IMG/VR virus record: IMGVR_UViG_3300027985_000918
Span: 338,384 to 402,383 of that record
DNA: 64,000 nucleotides
Direction: 5' to 3' (one strand)
A program made the translations under genes and the position numbers. The notes beneath the pieces were generated by a model, which worked only from the letters and a program-made list of their open reading frames with translations, did not search any database and was not told where the DNA came from. Below are positions 5,565 through 63,728 of the stretch, piece after piece; the stretch's first letter is position 1, and each line of letters starts with the position of its first letter.

Positions 5565-6200
5565 TCAGCCCTCCATCATGCGCTGGCGGGCCAACCGGAT
5601 ACTGGCGAACGGCTTAGAGGCTGCCTCTGCCTCAGCCACATCGTCGATGTACTCCGGGTGACCGATGATGTCACACTCCTTGACCAAGAACAGGCACTCC
5701 GGGCACCCAAGCAGCCGCTCGCTCACCCCCCCCTGCCTCTTGTAGGAGGCGGGGCGGAGGATGGCTTCCTTGCACTTTGGGCAGTTGAAATTGCCTGCAT
5801 CAATCTCCGTCTGGGTTGCCTTGTAGTGGCGATCCTTGGCGGCCCAGTAGAGGGACTTCTTGACGAACGCCTGGGCAACCCGGGCGGCGCTCTCAGGGGT
5901 GAGACTGGCGGCCTTGGGGCCGCCGGGGACGCTGACCGTCCCGGCACCCCCGGGCACGTTATCATGCTCGGGGTCTGCGGGGATCACGTCCTTCTGCTCA
6001 TACCGCTGAAGCTCTTCGACTGGTTTGCGCTCGGACCCGTGAGGCCACTCCACATCCACCATGCCAATGGCGGGATAGACCGTCGTGACACGGCCGATTA
6101 GGTCATGGTTGCCGCTCAGGAATGGGTATACCCGGTCACCAACCTCAAACTCCAAAGCCCGCTGTTGGTAATCCACATATGCAGAGCGGTCGTTACTCAC
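5565..6200 (-). CDS. Virion-type protein, N-terminal SH3/KOW-like barrel plus C-terminal Zn ribbon (211 aa)
   Basis: FEVGDRVYP..GRVTTVYP..VDVEW pattern; CPKC..CPEC; carries KAAS and RVAQAF motifs between the domains. Confidence 0.6.
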   Translation of the reverse strand: MSNDRSAYVDYQQRALEFEVGDRVYPFLSGNHDLIGRVTTVYPAIGMVDVEWPHGSERKPVEELQRYEQKDVIPADPEHDNVPGGAGTVSVPGGPKAASLTPESAARVAQAFVKKSLYWAAKDRHYKATQTEIDAGNFNCPKCKEAILRPASYKRQGGVSERLLGCPECLFLVKECDIIGHPEYIDDVAEAEAASKPFASIRLARQRMMEG

Positions 6201-6224
6201 GATGACCTCTCCCGGATTCTCTGA

Positions 6225-6860
6225 TCAGGAGAACAGGTTGAACCCGTGGCTGGCCTTCTTGCCGGCGTCCTTCTCGTCGTCCTCGTCCTCGCCGTCAGAA
6301 GCCCAACGGCTACCGGCCTTCTTGCCAGCGTCCTTCTCGTCGTCCTCGTCCTCGTCGTCTGAAGAAGACTTGATGACGCCCGTGGCGAGTTCGAGAGCCT
6401 TGGCAGCCTTGGCAGCCCCTGCGGGGGTCAACTTGGCGCTCTTCAGAGCGGCCAACAGAGCCTTGAAGTTGGCCTGGACACCAGGGTTGGCGGGCTGAGG
6501 ATCGAGGTCCGGTGCGGCGATGTTGCCACTCTCGACCTCCTCTCGAAGCTCCCGGCGCTCCTGCTGGGAAAACTCACCCCTCATGTAGGACTCATCCGAG
6601 TCACCCTCCAGGGGGCCGGCCTTCTCGACACCAATCTCGGAGGGATTGAAATCGGCGTTCTTGAGATTGCCCTTCTGATCTCGCACCAGCCCGGCGGTCC
6701 GCTCGATGCGGTCGGCCAAAAGGTCGCACCGATGAGCGAAATCGGAAGCCACCTTCTCGGGGATGCCGAGAGAAGTGTGCTCCATCTGGATGAGGGTGGC
6801 AATGCGATCCAGAGCGGCGCTAGCCTGGAATGCGCCCTTCTTTGTGATGCTCTTGGGCAT
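6225..6860 (-). CDS. Hypothetical head protein with duplicated acidic C-terminal tail
   Basis: Start moved to ATG at 6860 (MPKSITKKGA) behind a GGAG RBS; tail has DEDEDDEKDAGKKA twice. Confidence 0.6.
   Translation of the reverse strand: MPKSITKKGAFQASAALDRIATLIQMEHTSLGIPEKVASDFAHRCDLLADRIERTAGLVRDQKGNLKNADFNPSEIGVEKAGPLEGDSDESYMRGEFSQQERRELREEVESGNIAAPDLDPQPANPGVQANFKALLAALKSAKLTPAGAAKAAKALELATGVIKSSSDDEDEDDEKDAGKKAGSRWASDGEDEDDEKDAGKKASHGFNLFS
6252..6354. repeat. 40-bp direct repeat (2 copies, 63-bp period), coding
   Basis: ggccttcttgcc(g/a)gcgtccttctcgtcgtcctcgtcctcg at 6252-6291 and 6315-6354, one mismatch. Confidence 0.85.
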
Positions 6861-6979
6861 GTCTTCGTGCTCCTGTTCCATCAAGACCTCAACCAAGTAT
6901 CAGCTCGGGCATTCCAAGCCCTCCGCTGATATGGTCAAGGTATAGACGAAAGATTGAGAATCAGTGGTTCAAAACCCGT

Positions 6980-9900
6980 TCAACTGGGTAGTTCCTTGTC
7001 CTCTGTTACGGCCCTCATATACGCCCGGAACGCATCCGGTCTCATCTCCCGGATGCGCTTCCTCTCCTTGGGGTCGGTGACGTTTTTGAGCCATTCCTGC
7101 TTCTTCTGTTCCGGGGTCTTCTCAGGATTCTGCTTGTCTTCCCGGACCTTCCGACCGTCATCCTTCGGCTCGACCTTCTGATCGAGAACCGAGAGGTCTC
7201 CAGTCTCACTCACATGGCGGACCCGAGCTACGTTCGGATTCATCTTGTCGGGCACCGTTCCCGACAGCTTCTCTGCGGTAGACATCGTCAAACGCAGATC
7301 CTGAACCTGGACTCCCTCCCCTGCCTTTAGGCAGCTCTCCAGATCCTCCTGGGTCACAGCCTTGGCGATGCAGTGTGCCAGCTCATCGGCGGCCCCCTTG
7401 AGGGCCTTGTCGTCTGTCTTGGCCTGGCGTACCCTTTCGGCCAGACTCTCAGGGTCTGTGGTAGGCTTAGAAGTGGGCTTGGTTTTACCCTTCCCCTTCT
7501 CATCGGTCTCCTTCCCCTTGTGGAAAGCGTTCAGGAACCCTTGGGTTACAGTCATGTCGTTTAGGGCCAGCATCTTGAGCACATCTCGGGCGAACGCTCT
7601 CCCCTCTGCCGTGATGTGGTTGTCCTCATCATCATCCGTAAGAACCCTACCGATGGCCTCATAGGGGCTATTATCCCCTGCCACAGTTTCCACCAATTCA
7701 TCGTCCGACATGATGTCCAGAGCATCCCTGACCTTGACCCTCCCCTCAGGGCTGTACAAATCAGAAGCCCCCTTCAACAGTACGTCTTCGTCCCCAAGGA
7801 CAGCCAGAGACTGAGCCATCCTCTGGAAGCTCTTAGACATCTCCTCCGTGCCGGAGAGCTGGCGACCTTGTACAGCAGCGGCCAACATCATCCCCGACTT
7901 GATAGCATCCAGCTCGATGTACTCGTCTGATTCGGGGTCGGCCTTATCCAATTCCTGCTTGAGCTGGTCGGCAGCAGCATCCAGAAGCCCCGGCCCCGCC
8001 TTACGGAACTGGTGGTAAGCCTCAAGAGACCGCCCATGCAGCTCCTCCGCCGTTTTGTTGTTGTTGTTGACCGCCCGGCCACCAACAAGACGAGGGTTAG
8101 CCACCACCTTCGTGGCGAACACATACTCAGCCAGGCGCTTCGCTCGCACCTGGGGGGCAGCCTCCGCCAACCCCTTGGTCCCCCTCTTGAGAGCAGACTG
8201 AGCCCTCTTCAAGACATCCACAGTCAACCCCCCATCCTCCGCACGAGCGCTCAGAAGCTGTCCCATGTGAGAAGCATAAGCCTCTGCCAGCTCCTGCTTA
8301 GCGGAGGCCACATTCTTCTCGTACTCTGCCTTAAGCCTCTGGATATGATCCCGAACCCCCTGAGCACTCTCCTGATCTTCCGGAACCTCTGGGTACTCCG
8401 GCTCTTCCGGCCACAAATCACCCAGGTCCATTCCCTGGACGGCCTTGTCGAAATCAGCAAGCTGTCTCTGCTGCTTGGCCCTCTGCTGTTCCCGTTCCTT
8501 AACCTTTCGCTCTTCCGCTTGCTGGGCAGCGACCTCTGGATCTTCTTCCTCCTCACCTTCCCCGCCCCCTTCAGCCCTCCTCTTAGCGGATTCTTCATCG
8601 GGAGCCGACGTGGGCTGCTTGGACTTGGGAGGCCAAACACCCCAGCCGTTCTCCGTCTGCCAGTAGTCTCCCTCTTTGTGTTCAGCATCCTGTGGGACCT
8701 TCCCAGCAATGCGAATAGGAGGACCTGACAAGACCATCAACATCCGGTCACCGGCATCCGTGATAGCGGCAACCTTCTTGTAGTTCAGGGAGAGATCGGG
8801 ATCCTTCTCAGCCTTCCCCGTGTCGTCCACGTCCGGGTCATACTCGTCCATCCGATTGCGACGAAGGTCCTGCCGGGGAGGCTTCTTCGATGGCTTCGGA
8901 CGATTCATCCGCTCTACTTCCTCGTTCTCCTTCTCCCCCTCATCTTTGGTCGCCTGCCGGTACAGGTAAGCCGAAGCCACTCTCCCGGCTGCCTTCCTGA
9001 TCCACTCTGCAGCCAGGCGGAGGGACGTACTTGCCCCCTTGCCCAGCCGGACCGGATCTTCGTCAGAGCCCTTCTTGTCAAGACGTTTCATGACCTCGCC
9101 GGAGGCGAGGTACTTGTCGGCCAAACCGGGGACCAGGTACTGGCTCTTAAGGGTCGAGGGTTCATGGCCCACCGCCTTGGCGGTCTCTTTTAGAGCCTGC
9201 TCAAATTCCTTCTTGAGCAGCTTCCCCCGCTCCTTCTTATCCTCGGGCAGCTCCCCACCCTTGGAGCGGATATCCTTGAGACGGCTCTGCATCTCGGCAT
9301 TGGCGTGGTACCCCCGCATGTCCTTAGCGGTGATGCCGAAAGGCTCCAGGTACTCGTTCACGTCTTCGGCAGAGATATCCCCCGTTAGGCTGTCATTCTC
9401 CCCCTTTCCCTCTTTGGCGGCCTTGAGAGCCGACACCAAAGCCGGATCACTGACAACCTTCTCGTGACTCACGCCGGACTTGCCGACGTACTTGACGGTG
9501 ACTTTGTTGCCGGAAAAGGTCAGATGCTTGACCTTCCAACCTGTGACCCCATAGTGCCCATCCTCAGCAGACTCCTCATTGCCGACCCGCTCGTATGTCT
9601 CGTCCATGAGGCCAACAATCAGGGCCTTTAGCCGGGTGTCCTCGTCCTTGGACTTCAAATCCTTCGACACCTGCGCCCTCAGCTTGGTGATGGATCCACG
9701 TAGCTTCTCTACCTGCTTAGCCTTCTCTCGGTTCCGGAGTTCAATCTGGCCCTCGCTGTACTCGTAGACGGTCGTGGTCCCTTTGCCATCGGCCTTGGGG
9801 ACCTCCTTCTTCTTCTGATACTTGGCGGACACCCGAAGAACGGCCTCCTTAGAAAGCCCCCCCGCTGTTGCGGCGGCCTCATCGTAGCGGAGCTTGAACA

Positions 9901-12100
9901 GTTTGATCTCCATGTCCTGCTTGCGCCCCTTGGGCACTGGCTCCACGATCACCACAGGTTCCCCAGACTTCTCGTCAGTCTTGAACTCTTTGATAACCCC
10001 CTTCTTATTCTTGTACTTGCCGTACAAGACGGGGTCACCGACATTCAGGGTGAAGGTTTTGGCGATCCGCAGAGCTGCCTCCTTCATCCACTCGTTATCC
10101 TCCGGGGGGTACAGCTCCTGGAGGTGTGGCATCTCATCCTGGAGGCCCGTGTAGACCCCCTTGAGCAAAGTCTTCTTCGCCTGGGTGTTCAGGGCCCTAT
10201 GGACCCTGTTCCATGTGGTGGAATTCTCCAGGGCACGGTCCAGGAGGGACATCGAGGCTCCCGCCCAGAGGTTTCCGGCCCCCCCCTGCTCATGGACGTA
10301 ATCAATCACTTCGTCCACGATCTGCTGCATGAACGCCCGGATCTCAGTCGCTTCGTTGTGGTAGGTGTCCTCGTCAAGGTGACTGATTCCCCCTGGGGCA
10401 AGAAGGTCCCGGAGGTGGGTGATTTCATGAATCAGAACCGAGTACACCTCCTTGGCGACCCGGGCCTCATTGTCCAGAAACGCCTTGGGGGACTTGGCAG
10501 CATCGAGAGTGACCGTCATCTGGTACTTGAACGCATGGCTCCCCTGAACCCTCTGCGTAACTGCCCCCCCTACCACATACTGCCGGGGACCGCTGAAACC
10601 CAAGGCCTTGTTTCTGGACTCAACCTTGACATCCACAGCCACAAGGGCGCCCTTCACATCCTGGACGACGTACTTAGCGACGACAAAACCCCATGTGTCC
10701 GGCCGGAACCCCCGCTGGGAGTACAGAGAGTCAGAAGGGTCATCTCGAAACCGTAGGTGCTGGGGCAGCACCTGCATGATCTTGTCCGTCAGCCCCTTGG
10801 CCTCGACCTTGTTGATCGGAATAGGACGAGCAGCCCTCTTCTTGGTGTACGCCTGTGCCACTCGGAACACTGCCCCAGCGGTACGCTGCCAGCTTTCTGA
10901 GGTCATCCCCATCCGCTTAGCCGGCACCTGTCCTTTGCCCACCGTCCCCTGTCCCCGGGCAAGCCTCATAAGGGGCTTGCCATACAAACCGGACATGCTC
11001 AGCGCCCTCTGCATCCTGAACTTGCCCACATCGGACAGCTTCTCGGGGGCCGACATGAAGGCAACGAAAGACTCTGCAAAGTCCTCCCTCTCGTTGGTCT
11101 TGGCGTACTCAGTGGGCACATGTAGGGCTTCGATAGCCTGGGCCACCGCAGAGTCACCCTGGGCATACTCTGCCACCTGCTCTTCGGTGAGAACAGGGTG
11201 GTGGTAGCTAGAGTACGAGTCCAGCACTCCCATCTTGTCCTGCTTCTGGCGCCATGCCCGGGAAAGAACCTGGTCGAACCTCTCAGTCCCAGGAGTCACC
11301 CCCTGGTTCTCCTCGACGTGCTTCTGGAACCAGGACCGCAGAGCCTTATTCCGGCTGAGCCGCTTAGCGATCTGCTTCAGATGGTAGACGTTAGCATTCC
11401 CCATCCAGAAGGTCAGATCTTCTATGAGCCCCCGAAAATCCTGCTGGGCCTCGGAGCCCATCTCCAGAAAGGGGTCGGAGCTGCTGTACTTCTCCATGCC
11501 TGCACGGAGCTTGTGAACCTGAGGCATCCCCCAGACCTCAATCTCGTCGAAGGACCAGGAACCAGTCGGGATCGGACCCTCCCACTCAGTGTCGAGACCG
11601 TCGAGGTATTCAAGGGTGGTGTGGGGGCGGTAAACCGTCCAGCTATCCGTTACCTCGACCCCAATGTCCTGGATAGCCGACTTGAGACGGTCCCGAAGCT
11701 CTGCCATGCGGTGACTGAATCGAATGGGGAGAATAGCAACCCGCCGCTGCTGGGATTCATGGGTGAAGTAGTCCAACCCCTCCAGTTTGGCCTGTACGGG
11801 CCCCCTCAGTTCTTCGGACACCACCCGCTGGCAGGTCTCGATGAACTCGTCCTCATGACCCTTGACGTTGCCAACGTAGAGCAGAGTGACGTGGGGCGGA
11901 CTCTTGTCGTTACCCGACTTTTTCACCGGAAACTGGCTGGAAATCCCCCGGGGTAGAGGAATGAACAGCCCTGTCCACTCCGTGCTGTCGCCGGTCTTTT
12001 TGCCGTCATCGGGACCGGCGTGCCTTTTAGCCCAATCAGCCTTGACCTGCTGCCGGACGGCCAATCTGCGAGCCTGTGCTTGAAGAATAGGGTGCTCCAC
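6980..12100 (-). CDS. 1706-aa multidomain protein: 2H phosphoesterase, zincin-like, KOW/SH3, DNA topoisomerase IB, helical C-terminus
   Basis: HVT and HTT motifs (about 11890 and 11620); YAKTNEREDFAESF; HEITH at 10416-10430 with downstream NEATEIRA; VGDPVLYGKYKNKKG; TopIB residues in YERVGN, VGKSG, KDMRGY, VGH and SQY. Confidence 0.8.
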   Translation of the reverse strand: MEHPILQAQARRLAVRQQVKADWAKRHAGPDDGKKTGDSTEWTGLFIPLPRGISSQFPVKKSGNDKSPPHVTLLYVGNVKGHEDEFIETCQRVVSEELRGPVQAKLEGLDYFTHESQQRRVAILPIRFSHRMAELRDRLKSAIQDIGVEVTDSWTVYRPHTTLEYLDGLDTEWEGPIPTGSWSFDEIEVWGMPQVHKLRAGMEKYSSSDPFLEMGSEAQQDFRGLIEDLTFWMGNANVYHLKQIAKRLSRNKALRSWFQKHVEENQGVTPGTERFDQVLSRAWRQKQDKMGVLDSYSSYHHPVLTEEQVAEYAQGDSAVAQAIEALHVPTEYAKTNEREDFAESFVAFMSAPEKLSDVGKFRMQRALSMSGLYGKPLMRLARGQGTVGKGQVPAKRMGMTSESWQRTAGAVFRVAQAYTKKRAARPIPINKVEAKGLTDKIMQVLPQHLRFRDDPSDSLYSQRGFRPDTWGFVVAKYVVQDVKGALVAVDVKVESRNKALGFSGPRQYVVGGAVTQRVQGSHAFKYQMTVTLDAAKSPKAFLDNEARVAKEVYSVLIHEITHLRDLLAPGGISHLDEDTYHNEATEIRAFMQQIVDEVIDYVHEQGGAGNLWAGASMSLLDRALENSTTWNRVHRALNTQAKKTLLKGVYTGLQDEMPHLQELYPPEDNEWMKEAALRIAKTFTLNVGDPVLYGKYKNKKGVIKEFKTDEKSGEPVVIVEPVPKGRKQDMEIKLFKLRYDEAAATAGGLSKEAVLRVSAKYQKKKEVPKADGKGTTTVYEYSEGQIELRNREKAKQVEKLRGSITKLRAQVSKDLKSKDEDTRLKALIVGLMDETYERVGNEESAEDGHYGVTGWKVKHLTFSGNKVTVKYVGKSGVSHEKVVSDPALVSALKAAKEGKGENDSLTGDISAEDVNEYLEPFGITAKDMRGYHANAEMQSRLKDIRSKGGELPEDKKERGKLLKKEFEQALKETAKAVGHEPSTLKSQYLVPGLADKYLASGEVMKRLDKKGSDEDPVRLGKGASTSLRLAAEWIRKAAGRVASAYLYRQATKDEGEKENEEVERMNRPKPSKKPPRQDLRRNRMDEYDPDVDDTGKAEKDPDLSLNYKKVAAITDAGDRMLMVLSGPPIRIAGKVPQDAEHKEGDYWQTENGWGVWPPKSKQPTSAPDEESAKRRAEGGGEGEEEEDPEVAAQQAEERKVKEREQQRAKQQRQLADFDKAVQGMDLGDLWPEEPEYPEVPEDQESAQGVRDHIQRLKAEYEKNVASAKQELAEAYASHMGQLLSARAEDGGLTVDVLKRAQSALKRGTKGLAEAAPQVRAKRLAEYVFATKVVANPRLVGGRAVNNNNKTAEELHGRSLEAYHQFRKAGPGLLDAAADQLKQELDKADPESDEYIELDAIKSGMMLAAAVQGRQLSGTEEMSKSFQRMAQSLAVLGDEDVLLKGASDLYSPEGRVKVRDALDIMSDDELVETVAGDNSPYEAIGRVLTDDDEDNHITAEGRAFARDVLKMLALNDMTVTQGFLNAFHKGKETDEKGKGKTKPTSKPTTDPESLAERVRQAKTDDKALKGAADELAHCIAKAVTQEDLESCLKAGEGVQVQDLRLTMSTAEKLSGTVPDKMNPNVARVRHVSETGDLSVLDQKVEPKDDGRKVREDKQNPEKTPEQKKQEWLKNVTDPKERKRIREMRPDAFRAYMRAVTEDKELPS

Positions 12101-12144
12101 CGGGTGTTCCTCCAGTCTCTACCTTCGGCAGAGCTATAAACAAA

Positions 12145-19915: not shown

Positions 19916-20595
19916 GCCGTCCTCCTTGCCGAGTACCGAGCTGCAAGGCGAGATGCCTGCACATGGATATTACCGTCGGCAGAGGCCAGTCTGGGCTTTC
20001 CGTCGGTCACCTTATCATCGTCCCGATCCGCCTCGGACTCTTCCTGCTCCGCCCACTCCTCCGGGTCCTCCCGAATTTCCTCCACTTCGTCCATGATCTG
20101 CTTGACCTCATCCCGATCACGGGGGTCTCCACCAGAGTCATCGACCCGAGGATTCCAATGGACGGCCTGCATCTCGTCGTACATCGAGTCGGAAACAGCG
20201 CTCAACGCCTCCAGGACGTTCGTGTAGAGCTTACGGATGTCCTTAATTGTCAGAATATAACCCTTCCCACCAATGGACCCGTCGGGGCTGATCCGCTGAC
20301 TCTTGATCTTGTTGAAAATGGTGTAGGCACTCTGGGCATGCCCCAGTGCCATCAAAGTAGCTCTCAGGGACTTGGCCAGGGGCTCCAGGTTCTTGGGGTT
20401 GAACTCGTAATCGGGGTCAATCATCCGCTCAGATGCCCCGGCGGGATTCCACGCCCATTCCTTGGAGTCCCCCCCACGATCCTTGATGAAGCGGACTTCA
20501 CCGGCCGTGCGGTCCATGGCGGCACGTTTCATATGTGCCGAAGCCACCCGGCGGATGGCTTCGGCGTCAAGCTGTGGAGTCCTCGTCGTGGACAT
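19912..20595 (-). CDS. Hypothetical virion protein with RVAxxH and RLAxxY motifs at both termini (227 aa)
   Basis: N-terminal IRRVASAHMKRAA, C-terminal SRLAARY; GGAGG RBS; late-type motif upstream. Confidence 0.65.
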   Translation of the reverse strand: MSTTRTPQLDAEAIRRVASAHMKRAAMDRTAGEVRFIKDRGGDSKEWAWNPAGASERMIDPDYEFNPKNLEPLAKSLRATLMALGHAQSAYTIFNKIKSQRISPDGSIGGKGYILTIKDIRKLYTNVLEALSAVSDSMYDEMQAVHWNPRVDDSGGDPRDRDEVKQIMDEVEEIREDPEEWAEQEESEADRDDDKVTDGKPRLASADGNIHVQASRLAARYSARRTA

Positions 20596-20651: not shown

Positions 20652-21071
20652 TCAGTGGGGCATCTGCTTGAACGGAATACGACTACGCAGGCTAAACCCC
20701 TCCATCGCCTGATCTACTTCATCCGACCCGATAGACCGGGTGTTCACCCCGACACGAAAACCGTAGTTAGCCACCATGACTCTCGGATTCGACTTCGGGC
20801 AGAAAAACGTCGTCCCCAGGCCAGTCCCGCCCGCCCAGGCGTCTCCCGACTCCAGATCCTTCTGAAGCTCCATAAACAGGCCGAAGAGTTTCTTGTCCCA
20901 TGTCTGGATGGGTTGGATCAGATGGTTGGCAGTGCCGTAGCCGGAGAAGCTCGTCCACAGCCAGTAGTCCCCCCCACCGGATTGGTGGAGGTACACCTTA
21001 GGGGCTTCTCCTTCTGCTGCCTGCTTACGAGTATGGGCCTCTGCGACCCTTTTGATTGCTGCACGGTTCAT
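20652..21071 (-). CDS. Hypothetical protein with N-terminal RVAEAH motif (139 aa)
   Basis: Starts MNRAAIKRVAEAHTRKQAA; operonic spacing. Confidence 0.6.
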   Translation of the reverse strand: MNRAAIKRVAEAHTRKQAAEGEAPKVYLHQSGGGDYWLWTSFSGYGTANHLIQPIQTWDKKLFGLFMELQKDLESGDAWAGGTGLGTTFFCPKSNPRVMVANYGFRVGVNTRSIGSDEVDQAMEGFSLRSRIPFKQMPH

Positions 21072-23973: not shown

Positions 23974-23974
23974 A

Positions 23975-25789: not shown

Positions 25790-26098
25790 TTACCAAACCC
25801 CTGTTGTCTCAAAACCCCGCCTCTCGAACCAGCTCTGAAGAGACAGCATAGCTTCCCGATTCGAGGACCACAGAGTCACACAGTCGAAACTCTCTCGGAT
25901 GCCGAGGTCTGGGATGGTAGGCACCCCCGCCATCGCCACCTTGCCATCTCTCTGGGATCGGAGCAGCCCGGGGATGTAGCGGTAATCCTTCGCCCCGTAC
26001 AAGACCGAGAATCGAAACTCAGCGGTGGCGATGCGGCTGACCCACCTCCGGGCCACTCGCCTTGCCATGACGATCCTCTTCTCGTTATCCTGGGACAT
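25790..26098 (-). CDS. Hypothetical protein with RVARRW motif (102 aa)
   Basis: AGGAG RBS; late-type ATCGGTAGAG upstream at 26128-26137. Confidence 0.6.
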   Translation of the reverse strand: MSQDNEKRIVMARRVARRWVSRIATAEFRFSVLYGAKDYRYIPGLLRSQRDGKVAMAGVPTIPDLGIRESFDCVTLWSSNREAMLSLQSWFERRGFETTGVW

Positions 26099-26797: not shown

Positions 26798-26892
26798 GCG
26801 TGCTCCCCGGCTAAACCCCCAAGAAGGGCTTTCTGCACAGCTCAAACAGACCAACCGACCTTCCAACCATACCCGACAACCGGGCACTGGCC

Positions 26893-51148: not shown

Positions 51149-51216
51149 GTTGTCTCCATCTGGCGAACAGTACACCGCCAGGTCAAACGGGTGTCATGTG
51201 GTGACCCTGAGGCAAC

Positions 51217-54787: not shown

Positions 54788-55978
54788 TTAGCCTCGCAGG
54801 AGGGGAACCAGGTGCTGGCGGAGTTCGGGGTGTCCGGAGGCCAGCTTACACACGTCCTGGCGGAGGATAGCCTCCATCTGGAACCCGTACTTGCGGAACC
54901 GACCGAACGTGCTCTCGTCCTCCATGATGTCGGACCAGGAGATGTCCTGGGTCTCCACACCCAACGTATCCAGCCTGTTCCGCACCGCCCGCTGAAGAGA
55001 CTGGTTTCCTTCCATGGCCTGGAAAATGACAGGCATGGCGGCCATCCAGTGCTTTTTGACTTTGACTTTTGCCGCAGCCTCTCCTTTGCTGTCCATCCCC
55101 GGAACGATGTATCCGGCAGCTTCCGCAAGCTCCTTCCCCGAGATGAACTCTCCACGATTCAGAGCCTCCCACCAAGCCTGCATGGTGGGGATGGCGGCAG
55201 TGGGAATCTTCGTGTCGATGATCTTTTTGATAGCCTGCCGGACGGCCTTCCCCAGCGGGTCGTTGGAGAAGAAAACCATGTCGAACACGTCCCTCGACAC
55301 CTGAGAGGGATCAGCCACGCCACCATGGCCGCCTTCCTCGGTCTGCCCGTGCGGTCCGGTGTCCAGAGTAATCCCCTGGATCCTCTGGTGGCGACGGAGC
55401 TTGTTGATCACGTTAAGAGCGGCCTTCTTGAGGCTCTTGCCAAGGGCCCCAGCGGCAACTTTGCCCGGGGATTCAGTACCGTCCAGGATGCCCGCCGAGA
55501 GGAATTTGCCGGCTTCCCAGAATTTGTTCTTGATCTTGCGGCGGACGACCTCCCCTTCTTCATCGACGTCGGCTCCCAGGCCAGCAACGCCGTCCTGGAC
55601 GACATCCTCCCCGGTCATGTCGGGGACCCCCGAGCGGCTGAGCCAACCGTCGAGTTGCCGGGTGAGCATCCGCACCATCCCCGTAGAGTTCGGGAGGAAC
55701 CAGTCGGGGTCCATGTCAGGGACGTACTCGGCCAGGTGGGCCTGGGCTTTCTTCAGCCCTCTCATGGGGTTCTGAGCCCAGGTGAACTCCCGGACCCCCG
55801 CTGCCCCCTCAAGGATGACCAGGCGGGCCATCACGTCGTAAAGGCCGTCCTCCGTCAGGGCCTTCTTCAGGTGGCGGTACGCCAGCCGGATGGCGGCCTG
55901 TTTCCCTCGGCTGGCAAAACGCTTATGAGAGGTTTCCCGGAGCGTAATCAGAGCCAAGAGCTTCTGGTACATGTTCAT
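54788..55978 (-). CDS. Sigma-factor-like protein carrying the C-terminal KLA..PELRQHLVPLLR motif (396 aa)
   Basis: Region-2-like EDVVQD..LKKAALNVINKLRR; HTH-like ISGKELAEAAG; tag motif at the extreme C-terminus. Confidence 0.55.
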   Translation of the reverse strand: MNMYQKLLALITLRETSHKRFASRGKQAAIRLAYRHLKKALTEDGLYDVMARLVILEGAAGVREFTWAQNPMRGLKKAQAHLAEYVPDMDPDWFLPNSTGMVRMLTRQLDGWLSRSGVPDMTGEDVVQDGVAGLGADVDEEGEVVRRKIKNKFWEAGKFLSAGILDGTESPGKVAAGALGKSLKKAALNVINKLRRHQRIQGITLDTGPHGQTEEGGHGGVADPSQVSRDVFDMVFFSNDPLGKAVRQAIKKIIDTKIPTAAIPTMQAWWEALNRGEFISGKELAEAAGYIVPGMDSKGEAAAKVKVKKHWMAAMPVIFQAMEGNQSLQRAVRNRLDTLGVETQDISWSDIMEDESTFGRFRKYGFQMEAILRQDVCKLASGHPELRQHLVPLLRG

Positions 55979-56081: not shown

Positions 56082-56109
56082 TTGACTTCCTAAGCCAACT
56101 TGGTATGGT
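56082..56109 (+). promoter_or_regulatory. Host sigma70-type promoter for the only plus-strand gene
   Basis: TTGACT (56082-87), 16-nt spacer containing extended -10 TG (56101-02), TATGGT (56104-09). Confidence 0.6.
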
Positions 56110-56208
56110 TGTCCAGTCGGGGAGCGACCCAGACCCACTCGGAACGAGATTTCGTCTACCGTCGCTGCCCGGAATTTTTCCAAGGCCACAGGCCAAGGAG
56201 GATGCCGC

Positions 56209-57732: not shown

Positions 57733-57787
57733 GTTGGACGTCTGGCTCCCAGGGGGTTCTAGGGCACATTCTCGTGCCACCGCCTGC

Positions 57788-58309: not shown

Positions 58310-58312
58310 AGG

Positions 58313-58654: not shown

Positions 58655-58655
58655 G

Positions 58656-61600
58656 TCAAGTCCTCGGCGGTTTGCTACGTCCAACGTAGGGGCTTGCCAT
58701 CAACTCCATCACCTCACGGTCCAACCGCACGTTTCCGGCGTCCCTCTTGGTGATCTCGTCCCACTCCAGCCCCAGGTTCTTGGCCTGTGCGTCTTTGATG
58801 ATACGGTCGAACAGGTCTGACTCCATCGACTGGAACCAGCGGCGGATTTCATCGAGGGTGGCATCGAATTCGTCCAGGTTCTCCGGGTCGTGGGAGAACG
58901 TGGCGTCGATGGTCACCTCATCCACGGGTTGCTCCTGCCCCTGACGCCAGGACCGGGCGGTCCTTTGCTTCATGTTCTCCGAGCTGAACGTGTCCCGGTC
59001 GAGGTGGATGACCGTGTCGAACGACTGGAGATTGTGCCCGAATTGGTATGTCTGCCCCAGCAGAGTACATGTCTTGATCCTGCTGTTGGGACTCACGACC
59101 TCCTTGAGCACGAACTGCTGCCAGCGGTCCGCTTTGTAGTGTACGTTGTAGAGACGGTGCGCCGGCAGTTCAGGCCAGCGCCGATATGCCTTGGCCTTGA
59201 ACGGTAGCGGGATGCGGGCCTTGCCCCCTTGGAGATTAGACAGGGCCGCACGGGCTTTGTCCTCGTCCCCCCGGAAGATGCGGACCACCTCTCGGGGGTC
59301 CACGTCAAAGGCGACCTCGTGGACCTCCCCGCCAGAGCTGTAGATGTTGATGGAGTCGTTTAGGGCGACGACATGCCAACCCGGGATAGTCTTCGCCAGA
59401 TGCTCTCCCGCCATCCGGCAGAGCTTCTTGTCATCTGCGAACACCAGCGCCCGGCTCGCCCCCTCGGCAGCTTCCAGCTTATCCGAGATGGTTTTGGTCA
59501 TGGCCTCCAGCTTAGGGTTCCCCAGGCGGTCCCCGATGCCCCGCAGGTCCTCCGGGGTGTACTTCTCCCCCCACGCCTTCAGCACCCTCCAGAGAGCCCT
59601 TGGGACAGGTTTTCCGTCAGGGGTCTCCCGAGTCTCCAACATGTGGGCCACGTCCTGCATAGCGTCTCGGGGATAGTTGGACAGGCCGTTCAGGAGCTTC
59701 AAAATCGGCCGGAACTGAAGCCCAAAGGCCCGTTCGATCTCCGGGTCTCTTGCCTCAGGGATGACTTTGCCGTCCGGGGCAAAGCCTCGGTCACGGAACT
59801 TCGCTACCAGTCCCCTCATGAGACGGGGCATCGTGGAGGTCACGTCCCGGTAGATGGACTCTACAGCGGAATCCATCTCCACAGCCAGGGTTTCCGGGCG
59901 CAGTGCGGGCAGCTCGAACTCTTCGACGTCGGTTTTGTCAGCGTAGAAGACGTTGCTCTTCACCCAGGTGTCCAGGTCATTTTTGACCAGGGGGTCCTCT
60001 TTGACGCCGACCACCCGGCCGCCCACCCGATCGGTAAATCGCTCCATGAACCGTCGCATCTCTACCCGGTTCCGCTTGGCTCCCTCGGACTTGGACGACA
60101 GGTCGATGTTGTTAGCGATGGCTGCCAACAGATACGCCTGCTCGGGCTCCCGCTCCATCGGAGAAGCGGAGAGCAGGATCTTTCTTGGGTGGAAGATGCC
60201 GTTGGCAGATTTGAACTTGGAAGAACTGGGGCTCGCCAGCTCCTGGGCCTCATCGAAAAAGATGGCGGTGTAGAGTTGGATGTCCCAGACCTTGCCCTCA
60301 GCACCCTGCTTCGGGCTCATTCCCCGCTCACGGCTCTTCCAGTACCCCACAGCTTTGAGAGACCGTGGGATGGTCCCTGAGGCTGCGGACCGACTGAACT
60401 CACTGTACGAGATGATGTCCACGACATCCAGGAGACTGGTCGAGGCGTCCCTCTCCAGAAACCCTCGGATCTCCTTGGGCAAGTTTCCCTTGAGGGAACC
60501 GGGGGACACGAACAGAAACCGTCCGTTGGTCTGGATGTTTTTGCCAGTGCTGGGGTCTCTATATGTAGCACCAATTTCCCCGAGTCCGTCCCGGGTGAGT
60601 TTTTGCATCATGCCGATAGCAGTGAGGGTGTTGTGATTAATCACCCCGTTGCCCACGAAACAGTGAGAGGGGTGATCTACTTCGATGTCCATCACGACTG
60701 CCACGGAGTCCTCGCAGACCTCGATGGGGTCGTAGAAGAACCGGCGGTCCACCACATGTGAGATGGCCTTGAAGCTGGGGTGGTCATGGCAACAGAGCGC
60801 CGCTGCTTTGCCGAGCATGCCGGACAGGAATGAGTAGGTGGGGTTCCGGCGGCCCCGTCGTACATGGTTCACCGTGTTGTAGAACGCTGGTCCATGCTGT
60901 CGCCGGAACCCGCTGACGTTAGTGTCCCCTTGGATCAGCATCTCATCGAAAAGCCGGCCAACCTCCACGGCAAGGTGGGGCACTGTGTCGAGATTGGAGT
61001 TCCGGCTCGAAGGTGTATTAACGAAAGCTGCCTGTTTCCGCTCGGACACGAACCCGATCTCCTGCCAGTACCGGACGGCATCCTCCCCTGTGATAGTCAC
61101 TCGCCAGTACGTGTGATCGAAACCTTTCACCTTCTTGGGGTGACGACTGCACAGGACGTTGAATCGGAGCAGGAGAACCTGAAGCTCCCGACCCAACTGC
61201 TCAGAAGCGGTCGTGAACTCGATGTTGGCACGAGATCCCTGAACATGGCCCTCAGCATCCACCAGCCCACGAATGAACTGGCGCATCGTCTCTTTGGTGG
61301 AACGTAGGATGATTTCTGGTACAGCCTTGTCCTTGGCGACCCCCATGCCGACCCCCATGCGAAGCAGGTACTCCCGCAGGAATCGACTCATCACCACGAT
61401 GTCCTTGTCGGGCTGGGTTTCCAAGCCCAGCAGGCGATGCAGCAGAGCTTCGATGTCTGCTCGGACCTCGGGGTTTTTCTCCGGGCACTGGCTGATTGAG
61501 AACAGCTTGTGATGGTTCGTCCATCCCTCGGCCACGATGTACCCGAGAAGCCGCCCCATCTCAGGAGACATCCGGTCAGGTACCGGGAAAATGTTCACGT

Positions 61601-63728
61601 TGCCGTTCTGGAACGTGATGTCAGGGTTCCGGCTTGGCTGCTGGAAGTCTTCCGCTACGGGAACCGAGAGAGCCGGGTCTTCCAACGGGAACGGGACGGG
61701 ATTGCGTTCGACACACAGGTAGTCCCCGGCCTCAAGTTCCGGGGTTTTCACCCACGTCTCGTTGCCATCCGGGGTACGAACCAGTAGCGGGTGGATGAGA
61801 GAGCCTTCCACCTCGTATCCACGACGAGTCCGCACCTTCAATGTGGGCTTGGGGCCACCATAGTAGAAGTTCTTGACGGGGAGCGCTTCGCCATTGACCA
61901 GCACGGACCAGCCCTCAACGGGAGCCACGCTGTTGGGTTCGGTCAGGCCGGGGTTCATGTCACGGATGGGTGTGAGGCCCTTGTCAGTAACGATGAGGGT
62001 GTCCTCCCGAACGCATTTGCCCACACCAGTGTCTAGGGCACACACCCCATTGTTCCCTCGGGCATCCATCCAAGCTAGAGCCTGCTTCTGCTTGGTCAAC
62101 AGGTCGAATTTTTTGGTCTCGTCGGTGTCCCGGTTCTTCCAGGTTGTCTTGAACCCACCCAGGTTCTCGGCGGCGTAGAACCTCAGGTTCTCTTCAGCCG
62201 TGGCCTGTTCTGCTCTGGCGAGATCCTTGAAGTACGTCTTCACCACATCCAGGGCACCCTTCGAGAGGGACATCCCCTTCAGGCTCTCCTTGATGACGGA
62301 GAAGTCCTTGGGATCGAAGTAGAAGGCGGCAGCCTTGGAACCTTCGACTTTGTGGTAGGTGATGGAGGGAATGCAGCCCCGCTTCGCCCCTGTGTTGCAG
62401 GCCATCGCTTTGATGGCGTTCCTTAGCTCAGCGTACTGGCGGGTTCCCGGGATTTTGAGGAAGAGCTTCTGCTCCTTCTCCACGAATTTCCGGTTGCCGA
62501 TTTTCTTCTCCACGTCCACTTCGGCCGTGGTCACATAGGGTTCCCGGTCTCCAGGATCGATGCGGACGGGGACTTTGCGCTCTCGGCCGTTCTTGGCTTC
62601 GTAGGCATAGGCTGTACCCTCGATGAGCCTCCCCTGGCTATTGACCATGTCGTCGAGGAACACGCCCTTGTAACGCCCAGACACGATGACCTTGACGTGA
62701 TCGATTCGGATCTGTCCCGTCTCCGGGTCCGAGATCATCATCGGATACTTCTTCGTGGCGAAGATCTTGGTAAGGCGACCCTGCTTGGCCTTGTCATCGG
62801 TGAGGGAGTCCCACTCGATGTTGCCTTCAAGTCGGTCCAGCTTCTCGTCGGGGACAGATCGCAAATCTTCGGGAGGGACCTCCGTGCGTGTCGGGACCCT
62901 CCCCAACCTCTCCCGAAACTGCTCCTGTTCCCGCCGTTTGTCCTTATACTCGTCGAATGTGAGGATCTGGCCATCACGGTCGAAGATGACCTTTTCCCCC
63001 GTTTTCGGGTCCTCGCCGATGCTGACGGGCCGCCCCATGACAAAGGACCGACCGGGGATCATCCCCGAAGAAGCGATCTGCTCCTGGATGCCCGCATCGA
63101 TCTCCTGGAGAGCCTGCCCTTTCTGGAGCATGAGCGCATAGCTCTCGGGGTCATCGTCTTTAAGCTGCTCGATGGCCTCCTGCTTGGGAGACATCTTGCG
63201 GAACAGAACCCAACGCTCCTGCCCCCGCTGCTGCGGGCGCATGTAGATACCCTTGTCCCTCGTGATGGCTTCGATGAGGGGAATCATCACGTTGTTGATT
63301 TGGGCCCATGTCGTTGGGTTGTCGGTCCGACCTTGCTCCAGACGCCCCAAGAGAGAGTTGAGCATAGAGCGAGCTTCGGCGATCTGATTGACTACAGCCG
63401 GGCTGAGGAGTCGTTGGTCCACGGGGGACTTCACCCGAATCAGGAGATTTGCCGCCCGCTTGAACTGTTGCCGGAGGTCATCCGGCACCGGCTCCCCCAG
63501 GGAGATCCGCTTGAGCAAGATGTAGAAACGGAAGAACTCCAATCCCCTGACCGTGAATGCCCGTCGAAGTTGAGTCCAGATCGCAGGCGGCAGGTAGTTT
63601 TCCGCCTGCGCTAGCTCTTTCTTGCGGGCCTTCGCCTCGGTGGGGGTCAGCTTGACGGTATCGGGCAAACCCCCACTCCAGGACTCAGCAACCCGTCGAA
63701 TAGCCCCCTCGGTGATCATGCCGGTCAT
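58656..63728 (-). CDS. SF2 (SNF2-like) helicase/translocase with long N-terminal extension and an intein (1690 aa precursor)
   Basis: Walker A LDTGVGK|T (split by intein), IFFDEAQ, LSASPM, VFADD, GHNLQ, QRTARSWRQGQ. Confidence 0.85.
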   Translation of the reverse strand: MTGMITEGAIRRVAESWSGGLPDTVKLTPTEAKARKKELAQAENYLPPAIWTQLRRAFTVRGLEFFRFYILLKRISLGEPVPDDLRQQFKRAANLLIRVKSPVDQRLLSPAVVNQIAEARSMLNSLLGRLEQGRTDNPTTWAQINNVMIPLIEAITRDKGIYMRPQQRGQERWVLFRKMSPKQEAIEQLKDDDPESYALMLQKGQALQEIDAGIQEQIASSGMIPGRSFVMGRPVSIGEDPKTGEKVIFDRDGQILTFDEYKDKRREQEQFRERLGRVPTRTEVPPEDLRSVPDEKLDRLEGNIEWDSLTDDKAKQGRLTKIFATKKYPMMISDPETGQIRIDHVKVIVSGRYKGVFLDDMVNSQGRLIEGTAYAYEAKNGRERKVPVRIDPGDREPYVTTAEVDVEKKIGNRKFVEKEQKLFLKIPGTRQYAELRNAIKAMACNTGAKRGCIPSITYHKVEGSKAAAFYFDPKDFSVIKESLKGMSLSKGALDVVKTYFKDLARAEQATAEENLRFYAAENLGGFKTTWKNRDTDETKKFDLLTKQKQALAWMDARGNNGVCALDTGVGKCVREDTLIVTDKGLTPIRDMNPGLTEPNSVAPVEGWSVLVNGEALPVKNFYYGGPKPTLKVRTRRGYEVEGSLIHPLLVRTPDGNETWVKTPELEAGDYLCVERNPVPFPLEDPALSVPVAEDFQQPSRNPDITFQNGNVNIFPVPDRMSPEMGRLLGYIVAEGWTNHHKLFSISQCPEKNPEVRADIEALLHRLLGLETQPDKDIVVMSRFLREYLLRMGVGMGVAKDKAVPEIILRSTKETMRQFIRGLVDAEGHVQGSRANIEFTTASEQLGRELQVLLLRFNVLCSRHPKKVKGFDHTYWRVTITGEDAVRYWQEIGFVSERKQAAFVNTPSSRNSNLDTVPHLAVEVGRLFDEMLIQGDTNVSGFRRQHGPAFYNTVNHVRRGRRNPTYSFLSGMLGKAAALCCHDHPSFKAISHVVDRRFFYDPIEVCEDSVAVVMDIEVDHPSHCFVGNGVINHNTLTAIGMMQKLTRDGLGEIGATYRDPSTGKNIQTNGRFLFVSPGSLKGNLPKEIRGFLERDASTSLLDVVDIISYSEFSRSAASGTIPRSLKAVGYWKSRERGMSPKQGAEGKVWDIQLYTAIFFDEAQELASPSSSKFKSANGIFHPRKILLSASPMEREPEQAYLLAAIANNIDLSSKSEGAKRNRVEMRRFMERFTDRVGGRVVGVKEDPLVKNDLDTWVKSNVFYADKTDVEEFELPALRPETLAVEMDSAVESIYRDVTSTMPRLMRGLVAKFRDRGFAPDGKVIPEARDPEIERAFGLQFRPILKLLNGLSNYPRDAMQDVAHMLETRETPDGKPVPRALWRVLKAWGEKYTPEDLRGIGDRLGNPKLEAMTKTISDKLEAAEGASRALVFADDKKLCRMAGEHLAKTIPGWHVVALNDSINIYSSGGEVHEVAFDVDPREVVRIFRGDEDKARAALSNLQGGKARIPLPFKAKAYRRWPELPAHRLYNVHYKADRWQQFVLKEVVSPNSRIKTCTLLGQTYQFGHNLQSFDTVIHLDRDTFSSENMKQRTARSWRQGQEQPVDEVTIDATFSHDPENLDEFDATLDEIRRWFQSMESDLFDRIIKDAQAKNLGLEWDEITKRDAGNVRLDREVMELMASPYVGRSKPPRT
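60630..62015 (-). mobile_element. Intein in helicase P-loop (462 aa) with LAGLIDADG homing endonuclease
   Basis: Starts CVREDT after GVGK, block B IH, ends VINHN before Thr; LGYIVAEG and RGLVDAEG motifs. Confidence 0.93.

What the first reader, a model, noticed from the sequence alone, without database searches (positions are those of the whole stretch)
5865..63695. Second recurrent motif R[VIL]Axx[YFWH] marking protein termini and domain junctions
Seen: RVAQAF (5865-5882), RLAAEW and RVASAY (9002-9019, 8966-8983), RVSAKY (9818-9835), RIAKTF (10052-10069), RVAQAY (10847-10864), RLAARY (19933-19950), RVASAH (20533-20550), RVAEAH (21033-21050), RVARRW (26042-26059), RLAYRH (55871-55888) and RVAESW (63678-63695). 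Copies sit within about 20 residues of termini or at boundaries between recognisable domains, often followed by K[KRQ]xA. I saw no clean match in the core replication enzymes (DnaX, DnaN, RecA, RecD2, NrdJ). Inference: a short amphipathic docking helix, a second cargo or protease-recruiting signal.
Basis: partly seen in the sequence, partly recalled or inferred. Interest (0 to 1): 0.8.

Follow-up and report, generated by a model that had tools for sequence, protein, structure and literature searches.

The report
Terminal docking tag on huge-phage head proteins
A short basic helix, R-[V/I/L]-A-x-x-aromatic, really is attached to the ends and domain junctions of head-assembly proteins in this 402-kb uncultivated phage and its relatives, most likely as a capsid-loading tag that sits beside protease cutting sites.

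Summary
All 12 peptides are on the minus strand at the stated coordinates. R[VIL]Axx[YFWH] occurs 14 times in the window's 57 proteins, against 2.1 in shuffles. The extended form A[AIVL]xR[VIL][AS]xx[YFWH] occurs 8 times against 0.10. Enrichment is confined to the head and packaging block (11 vs 0.95). The transcription and replication block is at chance (3 vs 1.3). Codons differ between copies, so the signal is in the protein.

It replicates in relatives. In 78 loci the count is 123 vs 35, and 63% of hits lie in the first 35 or last 25 residues. About 16 families carry terminal copies.

In the top 120 homologs of the 227-aa carrier, most members with a terminal extension have the motif there, at the N end, the C end or both.

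A companion element, [KR]-x-A-[S/G], lies 4-14 residues from 7 of 12 copies. It is enriched in scaffold-like, protease and polyvalent head proteins (29 vs 6.7) and not elsewhere (28 vs 24.8).

Best reading, inferred only: a prohead-docking helix beside Ala|Ser/Gly maturation cleavage sites, like the T4 capsid-targeting sequence and the herpesvirus scaffold tail with its M-site. The partner and the cleavage are untested. I file it as a new variant of a known kind.

The parts
5865..5882 (-). RVAQAF, residue 107 of the 211-aa protein (5565-6200), between the SH3-like N-half and the Zn-ribbon C-half. KAAS lies 11 residues upstream (5904-5915).
   Evidence: The LR745208.1 ortholog keeps it as RVASAY. 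Relatives keep 'K[ST]AS..RVA..'.
10847..10864 (-). RVAQAY, residue 413 of the 1706-aa polyvalent-type protein (6980-12100), before the HEITH metallopeptidase-like region. RTAG starts 7 residues upstream (10874-10885).
   Evidence: Leave-one-out score 11.4 bits.
10052..10069 (-). RIAKTF, residue 678 of the 1706-aa protein, just before an SH3-like segment (GDPVLYGKYKNKKGVI).
   Evidence: The L005 giant protein has the orthologous RIAKKF with TRSAG 17 residues upstream.
9818..9835 (-). RVSAKY (Ser variant), residue 756, about 30 residues before the Topo IB core (Pfam match 788-986).
   Evidence: Orthologous copies are RVAARY in L005 and NVAAKY in LR745208.1.
8966..9019 (-). Tandem pair RLAAEW (9002-9019, residue 1028) and RVASAY (8966-8983, residue 1040), after the Topo IB core. 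KGAS (9029-9040) and KAAG (8984-8995) flank them.
20533..20550 (-). RVASAH, residue 16 of the 227-aa protein (19912-20595): the N-terminal tag. RTAG lies 13 residues downstream (20500-20511), at the start of the conserved core GEVRFIKD.
19933..19950 (-). RLAARY, residue 216 of 227: the C-terminal tag. RLAS lies 14 residues upstream (19981-19992).
21033..21050 (-). RVAEAH, residue 8 of the 139-aa protein (20652-21071).
   Evidence: leave-one-out 11.6 bits. Scores 9.8 bits with a model trained on relatives only.
26042..26059 (-). RVARRW, residue 14 of the 102-aa protein (25790-26098).
   Evidence: 15.7 bits. Relatives conserve x[VL]AxRW[LVI], but position 0 varies.
55871..55888 (-). RLAYRH, residue 31 of the 396-aa protein (54788-55978). 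RFAS lies 11 residues upstream (55910-55921).
   Evidence: The only homolog (49% identity) keeps RYAS...KLAYAY.
63678..63695 (-). RVAESW, residue 12 of the intein-containing SNF2 helicase (58656-63728). This is a weak or variant copy.
   Evidence: Leave-one-out score is only 2.8 bits. Homologs keep an N-terminal hxR[VL]A[DE]A helix, but only 6 of 120 keep the aromatic.
3175..3213 (-).
   Evidence: Conserved in L089 as RFASLQG-RVASYF.
4011..5561 (-). Head maturation protease, the candidate enzyme for the [KR]xA|[S/G] sites.
   Evidence: phrog_18299 at 5.6e-13 and phrog_2774 at 3e-22. No sequence match in the PDB.

Best explanation
The motif is the core of a basic, moderately amphipathic helical tag of about 15-20 residues. 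The window consensus is roughly (E)-A-[AIV]-x-R-[VIL]-A-x-[A/R]-[YFWH]-x-[KR]-[KR]. The consensus across the wider clade is RVAxR[WYHF]L.

A lineage of uncultivated huge phages attaches this tag to the N-terminus, the C-terminus or the inter-domain linkers of proteins encoded in the head-morphogenesis region.

The most likely function is to dock these proteins to the inside of the assembling prohead (scaffold core or shell). The carriers are scaffold-like proteins, small proteins of unknown function and a multi-enzyme polyvalent protein encoded next to the portal.

A nearby [KR]-x-A|[S/G] site in a flexible linker would then be cut by the head maturation protease. That cut would separate cargo from tag and divide the polyvalent protein between its enzyme domains.

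Shown here: the motif exists, is enriched, sits at termini and junctions, is conserved in relatives, is predicted helical, and is associated with the second element.

Inferred only: docking to the prohead, cleavage at Ala|Ser/Gly, and the identity of the protease.
For: Enrichment and specificity:
- 14 vs 2.1 overall; 11 vs 0.95 in the head and packaging block, 3 vs 1.3 in the rest.
- Codons differ between copies.
- Opposite-strand ORFs in relatives are at chance, 39 vs 30.4.

Replication in relatives:
- 123 vs 35.0 in 78 loci; 96 vs 34.5 without the 227-aa family.
- 35% of hits in the first 35 residues and 28% in the last 25, against 12.5% and 8.9% expected. 16 families carry terminal hits.
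- 78 vs 15.6 in MCP-centred loci, with whole families carrying C-terminal '...RVAxRYLxxx-COOH'.

The 227-aa family:
- 426 homologs were found; the top 120 were examined.
- Of 116 members with an N-terminal extension of at least 12 residues, 62 have the strict motif there and 78 a loose form.
- Of 59 members with a long C-terminal tail, 40 have the strict motif in the last 25 residues and 45 a loose form.
- [KR]xAG lies directly before the conserved core in 120 of 121 sequences (the 120 homologs plus the query).
- [KR]xA[GS] lies upstream of the C-terminal motif in 37 members, 4-17 residues away in 35 of them.
- AF2 makes both tags helices. Residues 27-36 and 205-209 have pLDDT below 50 and hold or adjoin the two sites.

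The [KR]xA[GS] element:
- 57 vs 31.7 in the whole window.
- 29 vs 6.7 in six head-module proteins, 28 vs 24.8 in the other 51.
- 7 of 12 motif copies have one within 4-14 residues, against 2.1 for random placement (P about 0.0009).
- In relatives: scaffold-like family 229 vs 40.9 and protease 72 vs 24.5; TerL 66 vs 62 and portal 24 vs 24.
- Three scaffold sites keep their position in LR745208.1 although the surrounding sequence is poorly conserved.
- All 8 sites in the 1706-aa protein lie outside its three recognisable enzyme domains.

Gene context: MCP, scaffold-like protein, protease, portal and TerL are all present, and the multi-enzyme protein sits directly after the portal.

Precedents:
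- The herpesvirus scaffold C-terminus binds the major capsid protein and is released by cleavage at the M-site, predicted as VQA-S in PrV (PMC4498786).
Against: - There is no experimental or structural evidence for any binding partner or any cleavage.
- The position of site and tag varies. In the 396-aa, 211-aa and giant proteins the site lies upstream of the tag, so the tag would stay on the downstream fragment. In the N-terminal tag of the 227-aa family the tag would be removed.
- Five of 12 copies have no nearby [KR]xA[GS].
- The two candidate sites in the window protease's C-terminal region are not conserved in LR745208.1.
- In the 102-aa and 211-aa families the motif merges with family-conserved sequence, and position 0 varies. 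There it could be an ordinary structural helix.
- In LR745208.1 the tags are degenerate.
- Two carriers (396-aa, SNF2) lie outside the head block.
- Counts across homologs are not phylogenetically independent.
- The [KR]xA[GS] pattern and the 'six head-module proteins' grouping were chosen after looking at the data.
Confidence: 0.5

Rival explanations
1. Protease-recruiting exosite. The helix binds the head maturation protease itself and positions the nearby [KR]xA|[S/G] bond for cutting. It does not bind the shell or the scaffold.
For: The motif is close to the putative site, 4-14 residues away in 7 of 12 copies. It occurs on either side of the site, as expected for a flexible tether. The protease is long (516 aa) beyond its catalytic region.
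Against: Scaffold-like proteins carry many sites with almost no tags: 229 sites but 1 motif across 40 homologs. Five tags have no site nearby. Many C-terminal tags in relatives have no site within 30 residues (11 of 17).
Confidence: 0.15
2. Docking to some other hub or surface: a chaperonin, the portal, packaged DNA or the membrane. The tag would be a general basic amphipathic helix.
For: Net charge is +1 to +5 and amphipathicity is moderate. T4 propeptides are also reported to recruit chaperonins (PMC10052503).
Against: Conservation of specific residues (R, V/L, A and the aromatic at fixed spacing) across about 16 families argues for a defined protein pocket. The hydrophobic face is small (V, A, one aromatic), which is weak for membrane insertion. 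No candidate hub was identified.
Confidence: 0.15
3. No shared function. Unrelated families happen to share a favoured helix pattern (Arg N-cap, Ala-rich, aromatic), and each copy is a structural part of its own protein.
For: In the 102-aa, 211-aa, 223-aa and MCP families the match lies within family-conserved sequence. The motif carries little information: models give noise hits up to about 7 bits.
Against: A structural helix does not explain the strong terminal bias (63% of hits in terminal segments against 21% expected). It does not explain the modular presence or absence at either end of the 227-aa family. It does not explain the low-confidence linkers flanking the tags, the restriction to the head block, or the association with [KR]xA[GS].
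Confidence: 0.12
4. Replisome or clamp docking motif (PIP-box or beta-clamp-binding type) shared by DNA-metabolism proteins.
For: Carriers include a Topo IB domain and an SNF2 helicase. The aromatic residue followed by basic residues loosely recalls PIP boxes (from my own knowledge).
Against: There is no enrichment in the replication block (3 vs 1.30) and no match in DnaX, RecA, RecD2 or NrdJ. The SNF2 copy is the weakest, and the aromatic is not conserved in its family. The Gln and Leu positions that define clamp-binding motifs are absent.
Confidence: 0.03
5. A chance or compositional artefact of an Ala/Arg-rich proteome, or a DNA-level repeat read through in frame.
For: The proteome is rich in A, R, V and L. 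About 2-4 regex hits are expected by chance, and three listed or unlisted hits look like chance.
Against: No shuffle in 1000 reaches the observed count. The extended pattern occurs 8 times against 0.10. Codons differ between copies. Opposite-strand ORFs are not enriched. The result replicates in two independent sets of 78 related loci.
Confidence: 0.01

Closest known systems
T4 capsid targeting sequence (CTS) of internal proteins, removed by the gp21 prohead protease
   Same: A short terminal peptide on proteins destined for the head interior, sitting next to a maturation-protease site. Carriers include enzymes delivered with the DNA. The concept is cited in PMC10052503; the T4 details are from my own knowledge.
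   Different: The T4 CTS is strictly N-terminal, about 10 residues long, and cut after Glu (L/I-x-E). Here the tag can be N-terminal, C-terminal or internal, and its sequence is unrelated. The putative cut is Ala|Ser/Gly after a basic residue at P3. Targeting is not demonstrated.
Herpesvirus scaffold (assembly protein) C-terminal MCP-binding tail with the assemblin M-site
   Same: A C-terminal segment binds the major capsid protein, and an Ala|Ser site a few tens of residues upstream is cut to free the scaffold (PMC4498786). The C-terminal arrangement '[KR]xA S ... helix-COOH' seen here has the same layout.
   Different: There is no sequence similarity. Here many different proteins carry the tag, not just the scaffold, and some carry it at the N-terminus. 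The protease fold was not established here (no PDB sequence match).
phiKZ/SPN3US-type propeptides cut by gp175/gp245
   Same: Giant phages with many head-internal ejection proteins. Short (20-24 residue) or long N-terminal propeptides. Multiple cuts within scaffold-like propeptides. A C-terminal propeptide on the protease.
   Different: Their cleavage motif is A/S/G-x-E|. No shared helical tag has been described for them.
Encapsulin cargo-loading peptides
   Same: A short terminal peptide, N- or C-terminal, sufficient to load diverse cargo into an HK97-fold shell (from my own knowledge).
   Different: The encapsulin consensus is different and Gly-rich. Those peptides are not cleaved, and the shell is not a virus.
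Polyvalent proteins of phages (Iyer et al. 2017, PMC5512222)
   Same: The 1706-aa carrier combines a 2H phosphoesterase, an HExxH peptidase-like region and Topo IB, and is encoded next to the portal. The paper predicts packaging and proteolytic processing for such proteins.
   Different: The passages of that paper I searched mention no conserved junction or terminal tag and no Ala|Ser-type junction site. No MuF domain was detected here.

Membership tests
T4-type capsid targeting sequence | Located at the extreme N-terminus of the precursor | tested here: inconclusive
   Five of 12 window copies lie within 31 residues of the N-terminus. Others are C-terminal or internal. In relatives 35% of hits are N-terminal and 28% C-terminal.
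T4-type capsid targeting sequence | Immediately followed by a prohead-protease cleavage site | tested here: inconclusive
   A candidate site [KR]xA[GS] lies within 4-14 residues of 7 of 12 copies, but on either side of the tag. Cleavage was not shown.
T4-type capsid targeting sequence | Necessary and sufficient to load a protein into proheads | not testable with these tools
   Needs expression and particle purification.
Herpesvirus-type scaffold tail with M-site | Ala|Ser scissile bond upstream of a C-terminal MCP-binding segment | tested here: inconclusive
   The layout is present in the 227-aa family (37 members with a site upstream of the C-terminal motif) and in some C-tagged families. The bond and the binding were not tested.
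Herpesvirus-type scaffold tail with M-site | Protease with the assemblin fold (Ser-His-His) | not tested
   The only evidence is PHROG matches to 'head maturation protease'. There is no PDB sequence match, and no structure prediction was run.
Polyvalent protein (for the 1706-aa carrier) | Several unrelated effector or enzyme domains in one polypeptide, encoded among virion and packaging genes | tested here: met
   2H phosphoesterase at 65-168, Topo IB at 788-986, HEITH motif near residue 570. The gene lies directly downstream of the portal.
Polyvalent protein (for the 1706-aa carrier) | Anchor domain such as MuF, or an embedded processing peptidase | tested here: inconclusive
   No MuF match in Pfam. 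An HExxH motif is present but no peptidase family scored.
Clamp-binding / PIP-box motif | Q-x-x-[LIM]-x-x-[FY][FY] or QL[SD]LF consensus on replisome proteins | tested here: not met
   No Gln or Leu at the defining positions. No enrichment in replication proteins.

The most novel reading that the evidence does not exclude
A large clade of uncultivated huge phages uses one portable helical tag, at either terminus or at domain junctions, as a general cargo-loading signal for the capsid. The clade's MCP is at least 84% identical to the window's in the 80 best of 533 IMG/VR stretches. A herpesvirus-like Ala|Ser/Gly maturation cleavage would release the cargo. If so, the packaged and injected proteome could be read directly from sequence. 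That proteome includes a Topo IB / 2H phosphoesterase / metallopeptidase polyvalent protein.
Probability: 0.4. Interest if true: 0.75.

Novelty: new variant of a known kind. Interest (0 to 1): 0.62.

Why it matters
If the tag is a capsid-loading signal, the packaged and injected proteins of uncultivated huge phages could be predicted from sequence alone.

It would be a second, sequence-unrelated example of the T4 capsid-targeting principle. Unlike T4, it would work from either terminus.

It would also point to a phage maturation protease with herpesvirus-like Ala|Ser specificity. That bears on the shared ancestry of tailed-phage and herpesvirus assembly.

The polyvalent-protein hypothesis of packaging, processing and injection would become testable at defined junctions.

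A short portable tag would also be a practical handle for loading foreign proteins into large capsids.

Tried and rejected
- DNA-level repeat: rejected, because codons differ among copies.
- Nucleotide similarity to known phages: none. The putative 361-aa protein had no tblastn hit. The only GenBank phage with the 227-aa family is the unannotated LR745208.1.
- Pfam and PHROGs on the small carriers: no families.
- Fold search of the AF2 model of the 227-aa protein against the PDB: nothing below E = 0.4, only generic coiled-coil or prefoldin-like matches.
- ESM Atlas search: uninformative.
- Protease against PDB sequences: no match.
- The 396-aa carrier has only one detectable homolog.
- An HMM built from the 12 window copies found no extra copy in six frames above 7.1 bits. 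The motif is too short for database-wide profile searches, so none was attempted.
- Apparent depletion of [KR]xA[GS] in the MCP (1 vs 24.9) and in the 231-aa protein (1 vs 11.2): not used as evidence. The MCPs are about 85% or more identical to the window's, so they are effectively one observation.
- The second structure-prediction job and the representative-protein search were not used. Without a multimer option they could not address the binding partner.


Full report
**What the window is.** Almost all genes are on the minus strand and GC is about 60%. The window is part of a 402,383-bp IMG/VR viral contig, IMGVR_UViG_3300028422_000919. It has no nucleotide match in GenBank phages. The closest GenBank relative, found by protein search, is the unannotated 485-kb uncultured phage LR745208.1.

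The head and packaging region contains:
- major head protein, 666-1538 (phrog_2522, 4e-48)
- an acidic scaffold-like 508-aa protein, 2452-3978
- head maturation protease, 4011-5561
- a 1706-aa multi-enzyme protein, 6980-12100
- portal, 12145-14052
- large terminase, 14676-16673
- a run of proteins of unknown function up to about 26.1 kb

The remainder of the window encodes:
- a sigma-like protein and a NusG-like protein
- DnaX and a DnaN-like protein
- a PD-(D/E)XK nuclease and RlaP
- SbcCD-like proteins, RecA, RuvC and RecD2
- an intein-containing NrdJ
- an intein-containing SNF2 helicase

**Checking the observation.** All 12 peptides translate as stated from the minus strand. Against a curated set of 57 proteins (20,532 aa), the strict regex R[VIL]Axx[YFWH] has 14 matches. 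Within-protein shuffles give 2.14 +/- 1.46, and none of 1000 reaches 14.

Three strict matches were not listed: RVARVY in the MCP, RIATYF in the scaffold-like protein and RIALAH in the nuclease.

Aligning the copies shows a longer shared pattern, roughly (E)A[AIV]xR[VIL]Ax[A/R][YFWH]x[KR][KR]. Its sub-patterns are far above chance: A[AIVL]xR[VIL][AS]xx[YFWH] occurs 8 times against 0.10, and RVAxA[YFWH] 5 times against 0.07.

Because the pattern was chosen after reading the sequence, I scanned 8598 comparable class patterns. This one ranks 4th by ratio. Of the three above it, one is an acidic low-complexity run and the other two rest on only 7 matches.

Leave-one-protein-out HMMs score every left-out carrier above every non-carrier. 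Codons for the conserved residues differ among copies, so selection acts on the peptide.

**Where the motif sits.** Five copies are within 31 residues of an N-terminus, in the 227-aa, 139-aa, 102-aa, 396-aa and SNF2 proteins. One is in the last 12 residues of the 227-aa protein. One lies between the SH3-like and zinc-ribbon halves of the 211-aa protein.

Five lie between recognisable parts of the 1706-aa protein. That protein has a 2H phosphoesterase at 65-168, an HEITH motif near residue 570, an SH3-like segment near 690-740 and a Topo IB core at 788-986.

The head and packaging block (6-26098) holds 11 matches against 0.95 expected. The transcription, replication and recombination block holds 3 against 1.30. 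None is in DnaX, the DnaN-like protein, RecA, RecD2 or NrdJ.

**Replication in relatives.** I collected 78 loci around homologs of the 227-aa protein. Same-strand ORFs in these loci carry 123 strict matches against 35.0 +/- 5.2 expected. Opposite-strand shadow ORFs carry 39 against 30.4 +/- 4.9.

Without the 227-aa family the count is 96 against 34.5 +/- 6.1. Of all hits, 35% lie in the first 35 residues (12.5% expected) and 28% in the last 25 (8.9% expected). Sixteen families have terminal hits.

Many small families end in '...[KR]xAS RVAxR[YFWH]LxRxx-COOH' or begin with the same tag. In a second set of 78 loci centred on the MCP, with the MCP family excluded, the count is 78 against 15.6 +/- 3.9. 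Further families there carry C-terminal tags.

In the 227-aa family 426 homologs were found and the top 120 were examined:
- Of 116 members with an N-terminal extension, 62 carry the strict motif there and 78 a loose form.
- Of 59 members with a long C-terminal tail, 40 carry the strict motif in the last 25 residues and 45 a loose form.
- Linker lengths vary between members.

The motif is partly degenerate in the more distant LR745208.1. In the SNF2 family an N-terminal hxR[VL]A[DE]A helix is conserved, but the aromatic residue is not (6 of 120 homologs). The SNF2 copy is therefore a weak member.

**A companion element.** In the 227-aa family a [KR]-x-A-G tetrapeptide directly precedes the conserved core GEVRFIKD in 120 of 121 sequences (the 120 homologs plus the query). 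It lies 11-17 residues after the N-terminal motif in most. A [KR]-x-A-[S/G] lies upstream of the C-terminal motif in 37 members, 4-17 residues away in 35 of them.

In the window, 7 of 12 motif copies have such a tetrapeptide 4-14 residues away. Random placement within the same proteins gives 2.1 (P about 0.0009). A thirteenth composite copy, KFAS-LKN-RIATYF, sits in the scaffold-like protein.

The tetrapeptide is itself enriched in the window, 57 against 31.7 +/- 5.3. The excess lies entirely in six head-module proteins:

| Protein | Sites |
|---|---|
| scaffold-like (2452-3978) | 7 |
| protease (4011-5561) | 2 |
| 211-aa (5565-6200) | 2 |
| acidic 223-aa (6225-6896) | 7 |
| 1706-aa (6980-12100) | 8 |
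| 227-aa (19912-20595) | 3 |
| six together | 29 observed, 6.7 expected |
| other 51 proteins | 28 observed, 24.8 expected |

The seven sites in the 223-aa protein partly come from tandem repeats, so they are not independent.

In relatives the same contrast holds:

| Family | Observed | Expected |
|---|---|---|
| scaffold-like | 229 | 40.9 |
| protease | 72 | 24.5 |
| 660-aa neighbour (17933-19915) | 354 | 96.5 |
| TerL | 66 | 62 |
| portal | 24 | 24 |
| DnaX | 25 | 30 |

Three scaffold sites keep their position between the window and LR745208.1, although the surrounding sequence is poorly conserved. The two sites in the protease's C-terminal region do not. All eight sites of the 1706-aa protein fall outside its three recognisable enzyme domains.

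An AF2 model of the 227-aa protein was built from 99 sequences (mean pLDDT 75.7). It makes both tags helices (11-25 and 210-226). Confidence drops below 50 at residues 27-36 and 205-209, which hold or adjoin the two tetrapeptides.

**Interpretation.** Three patterns point the same way:
- a conserved helix at either end of a protein or at domain junctions
- separation from the body by a flexible linker carrying a short motif
- enrichment of that short motif only in scaffold-like, protease and portal-adjacent multi-enzyme proteins

This is what one expects of a prohead-docking tag working with maturation-protease sites.

The layout resembles two known systems. [quoted passage not shown] The herpesvirus scaffold has a C-terminus that binds the major capsid protein and is freed by cleavage at the M-site, predicted as VQA-S in PrV (PMC4498786).

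The 1706-aa carrier fits the 'polyvalent protein' class, for which packaging and proteolytic processing have been proposed (PMC5512222).

None of this is shown directly. The binding partner, the cleavage and the responsible protease are all inferred. The [KR]xA[GS] pattern and the grouping of head proteins were defined after looking at the data. Counts across homologs are not independent.

Several facts weaken the model:
- The order of site and tag is not uniform.
- Five copies have no site nearby.
- In some families (102-aa, 211-aa, 223-aa, MCP) the match merges with family-conserved sequence.

**Rivals.** A protease exosite fits the proximity of site and tag. It fits poorly with scaffold-like proteins that have many sites and almost no tags. 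Docking to another hub (chaperonin, portal, DNA or membrane) cannot be excluded. The tag is basic and only moderately amphipathic, with a mean hydrophobic moment of 0.47 against 0.31 in shuffles. A purely structural or convergent helix does not explain the terminal bias, the modular presence and absence, or the link to the second element. Clamp docking, chance and a DNA repeat are rejected.

**Verdict.** I found no description of this tag in the annotation libraries or the papers searched. I file it as a new variant of a known kind: a capsid-targeting peptide next to a maturation cleavage site. My confidence in the mechanism is about 0.5.

Noticed in passing
window 23347-23403, 25684-25734, 54794-54847 (all minus strand; coordinates approximate): A different recurrent terminal motif, [KR]LAxxxPx[LI]RxHLxPLLR. 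It is at the C-terminus of the 234-aa (23335-24039) and 396-aa (54788-55978) proteins and at the N-terminus of the 361-aa protein (24673-25758). It is conserved in P0121 and in the LR745208.1 ortholog. The 396-aa protein carries both motifs.
   Followed up: partly
window 6980-12100 (-): A 1706-aa protein encoded directly after the portal. It combines a 2H phosphoesterase (65-168), an HEITH zincin-like motif (near residue 570), an SH3-like segment, a Topo IB catalytic core (788-986) and a long acidic or coiled tail. In LR745208.1 the Topo IB part lies in a separate 528-residue open reading frame. In L005 the protein has 2806 aa.
   Followed up: partly
window 2452-3978 (-) and 6225-6896 (-): Two very acidic proteins with low-complexity Asp/Glu/Gly runs. 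The 223-aa protein has tandem 'DEDDEKDAGKKA[GS]' repeats. Each holds 7 [KR]xA[GS] tetrapeptides. They look like degradable scaffold or core proteins.
   Followed up: partly
window 46670-51175 (-) and 58656-63728 (-): Both the class II ribonucleotide reductase (NrdJ) and the SNF2 helicase carry LAGLIDADG-type inteins. Many SNF2 homologs of about 1200 aa lack the intein.
   Followed up: no
window 666-1538 (-); loci L087-L166: The 290-aa major head protein is unusually conserved. 533 IMG/VR stretches encode a relative, and the 80 kept are 84-100% identical (82% in LR745208.1). Neighbouring scaffold-like and internal proteins diverge much faster.
   Followed up: no
L001 20001-21593: The DnaX ortholog of LR745208.1 matches in two pieces (query residues 1-126 and 123-387) separated by about 490 nt. 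This suggests an intervening element (intron, intein or frameshift) that the window gene lacks.
   Followed up: no
window 26171-27438 (-): A sigma-70 region-4 protein and a NusG-like protein sit side by side just upstream of DnaX. Together they look like a phage-encoded transcription module.
   Followed up: no
window 19912-20595 (-): The core of the 227-aa family (invariant GEVRFIKDRGGD...SPDG..GGKGY) is predicted as a helical hairpin with a small beta hairpin. It has only weak, non-significant prefoldin-like fold matches. 426 homologs were found, all unnamed or called hypothetical. It may be a scaffold or core component.
   Followed up: partly
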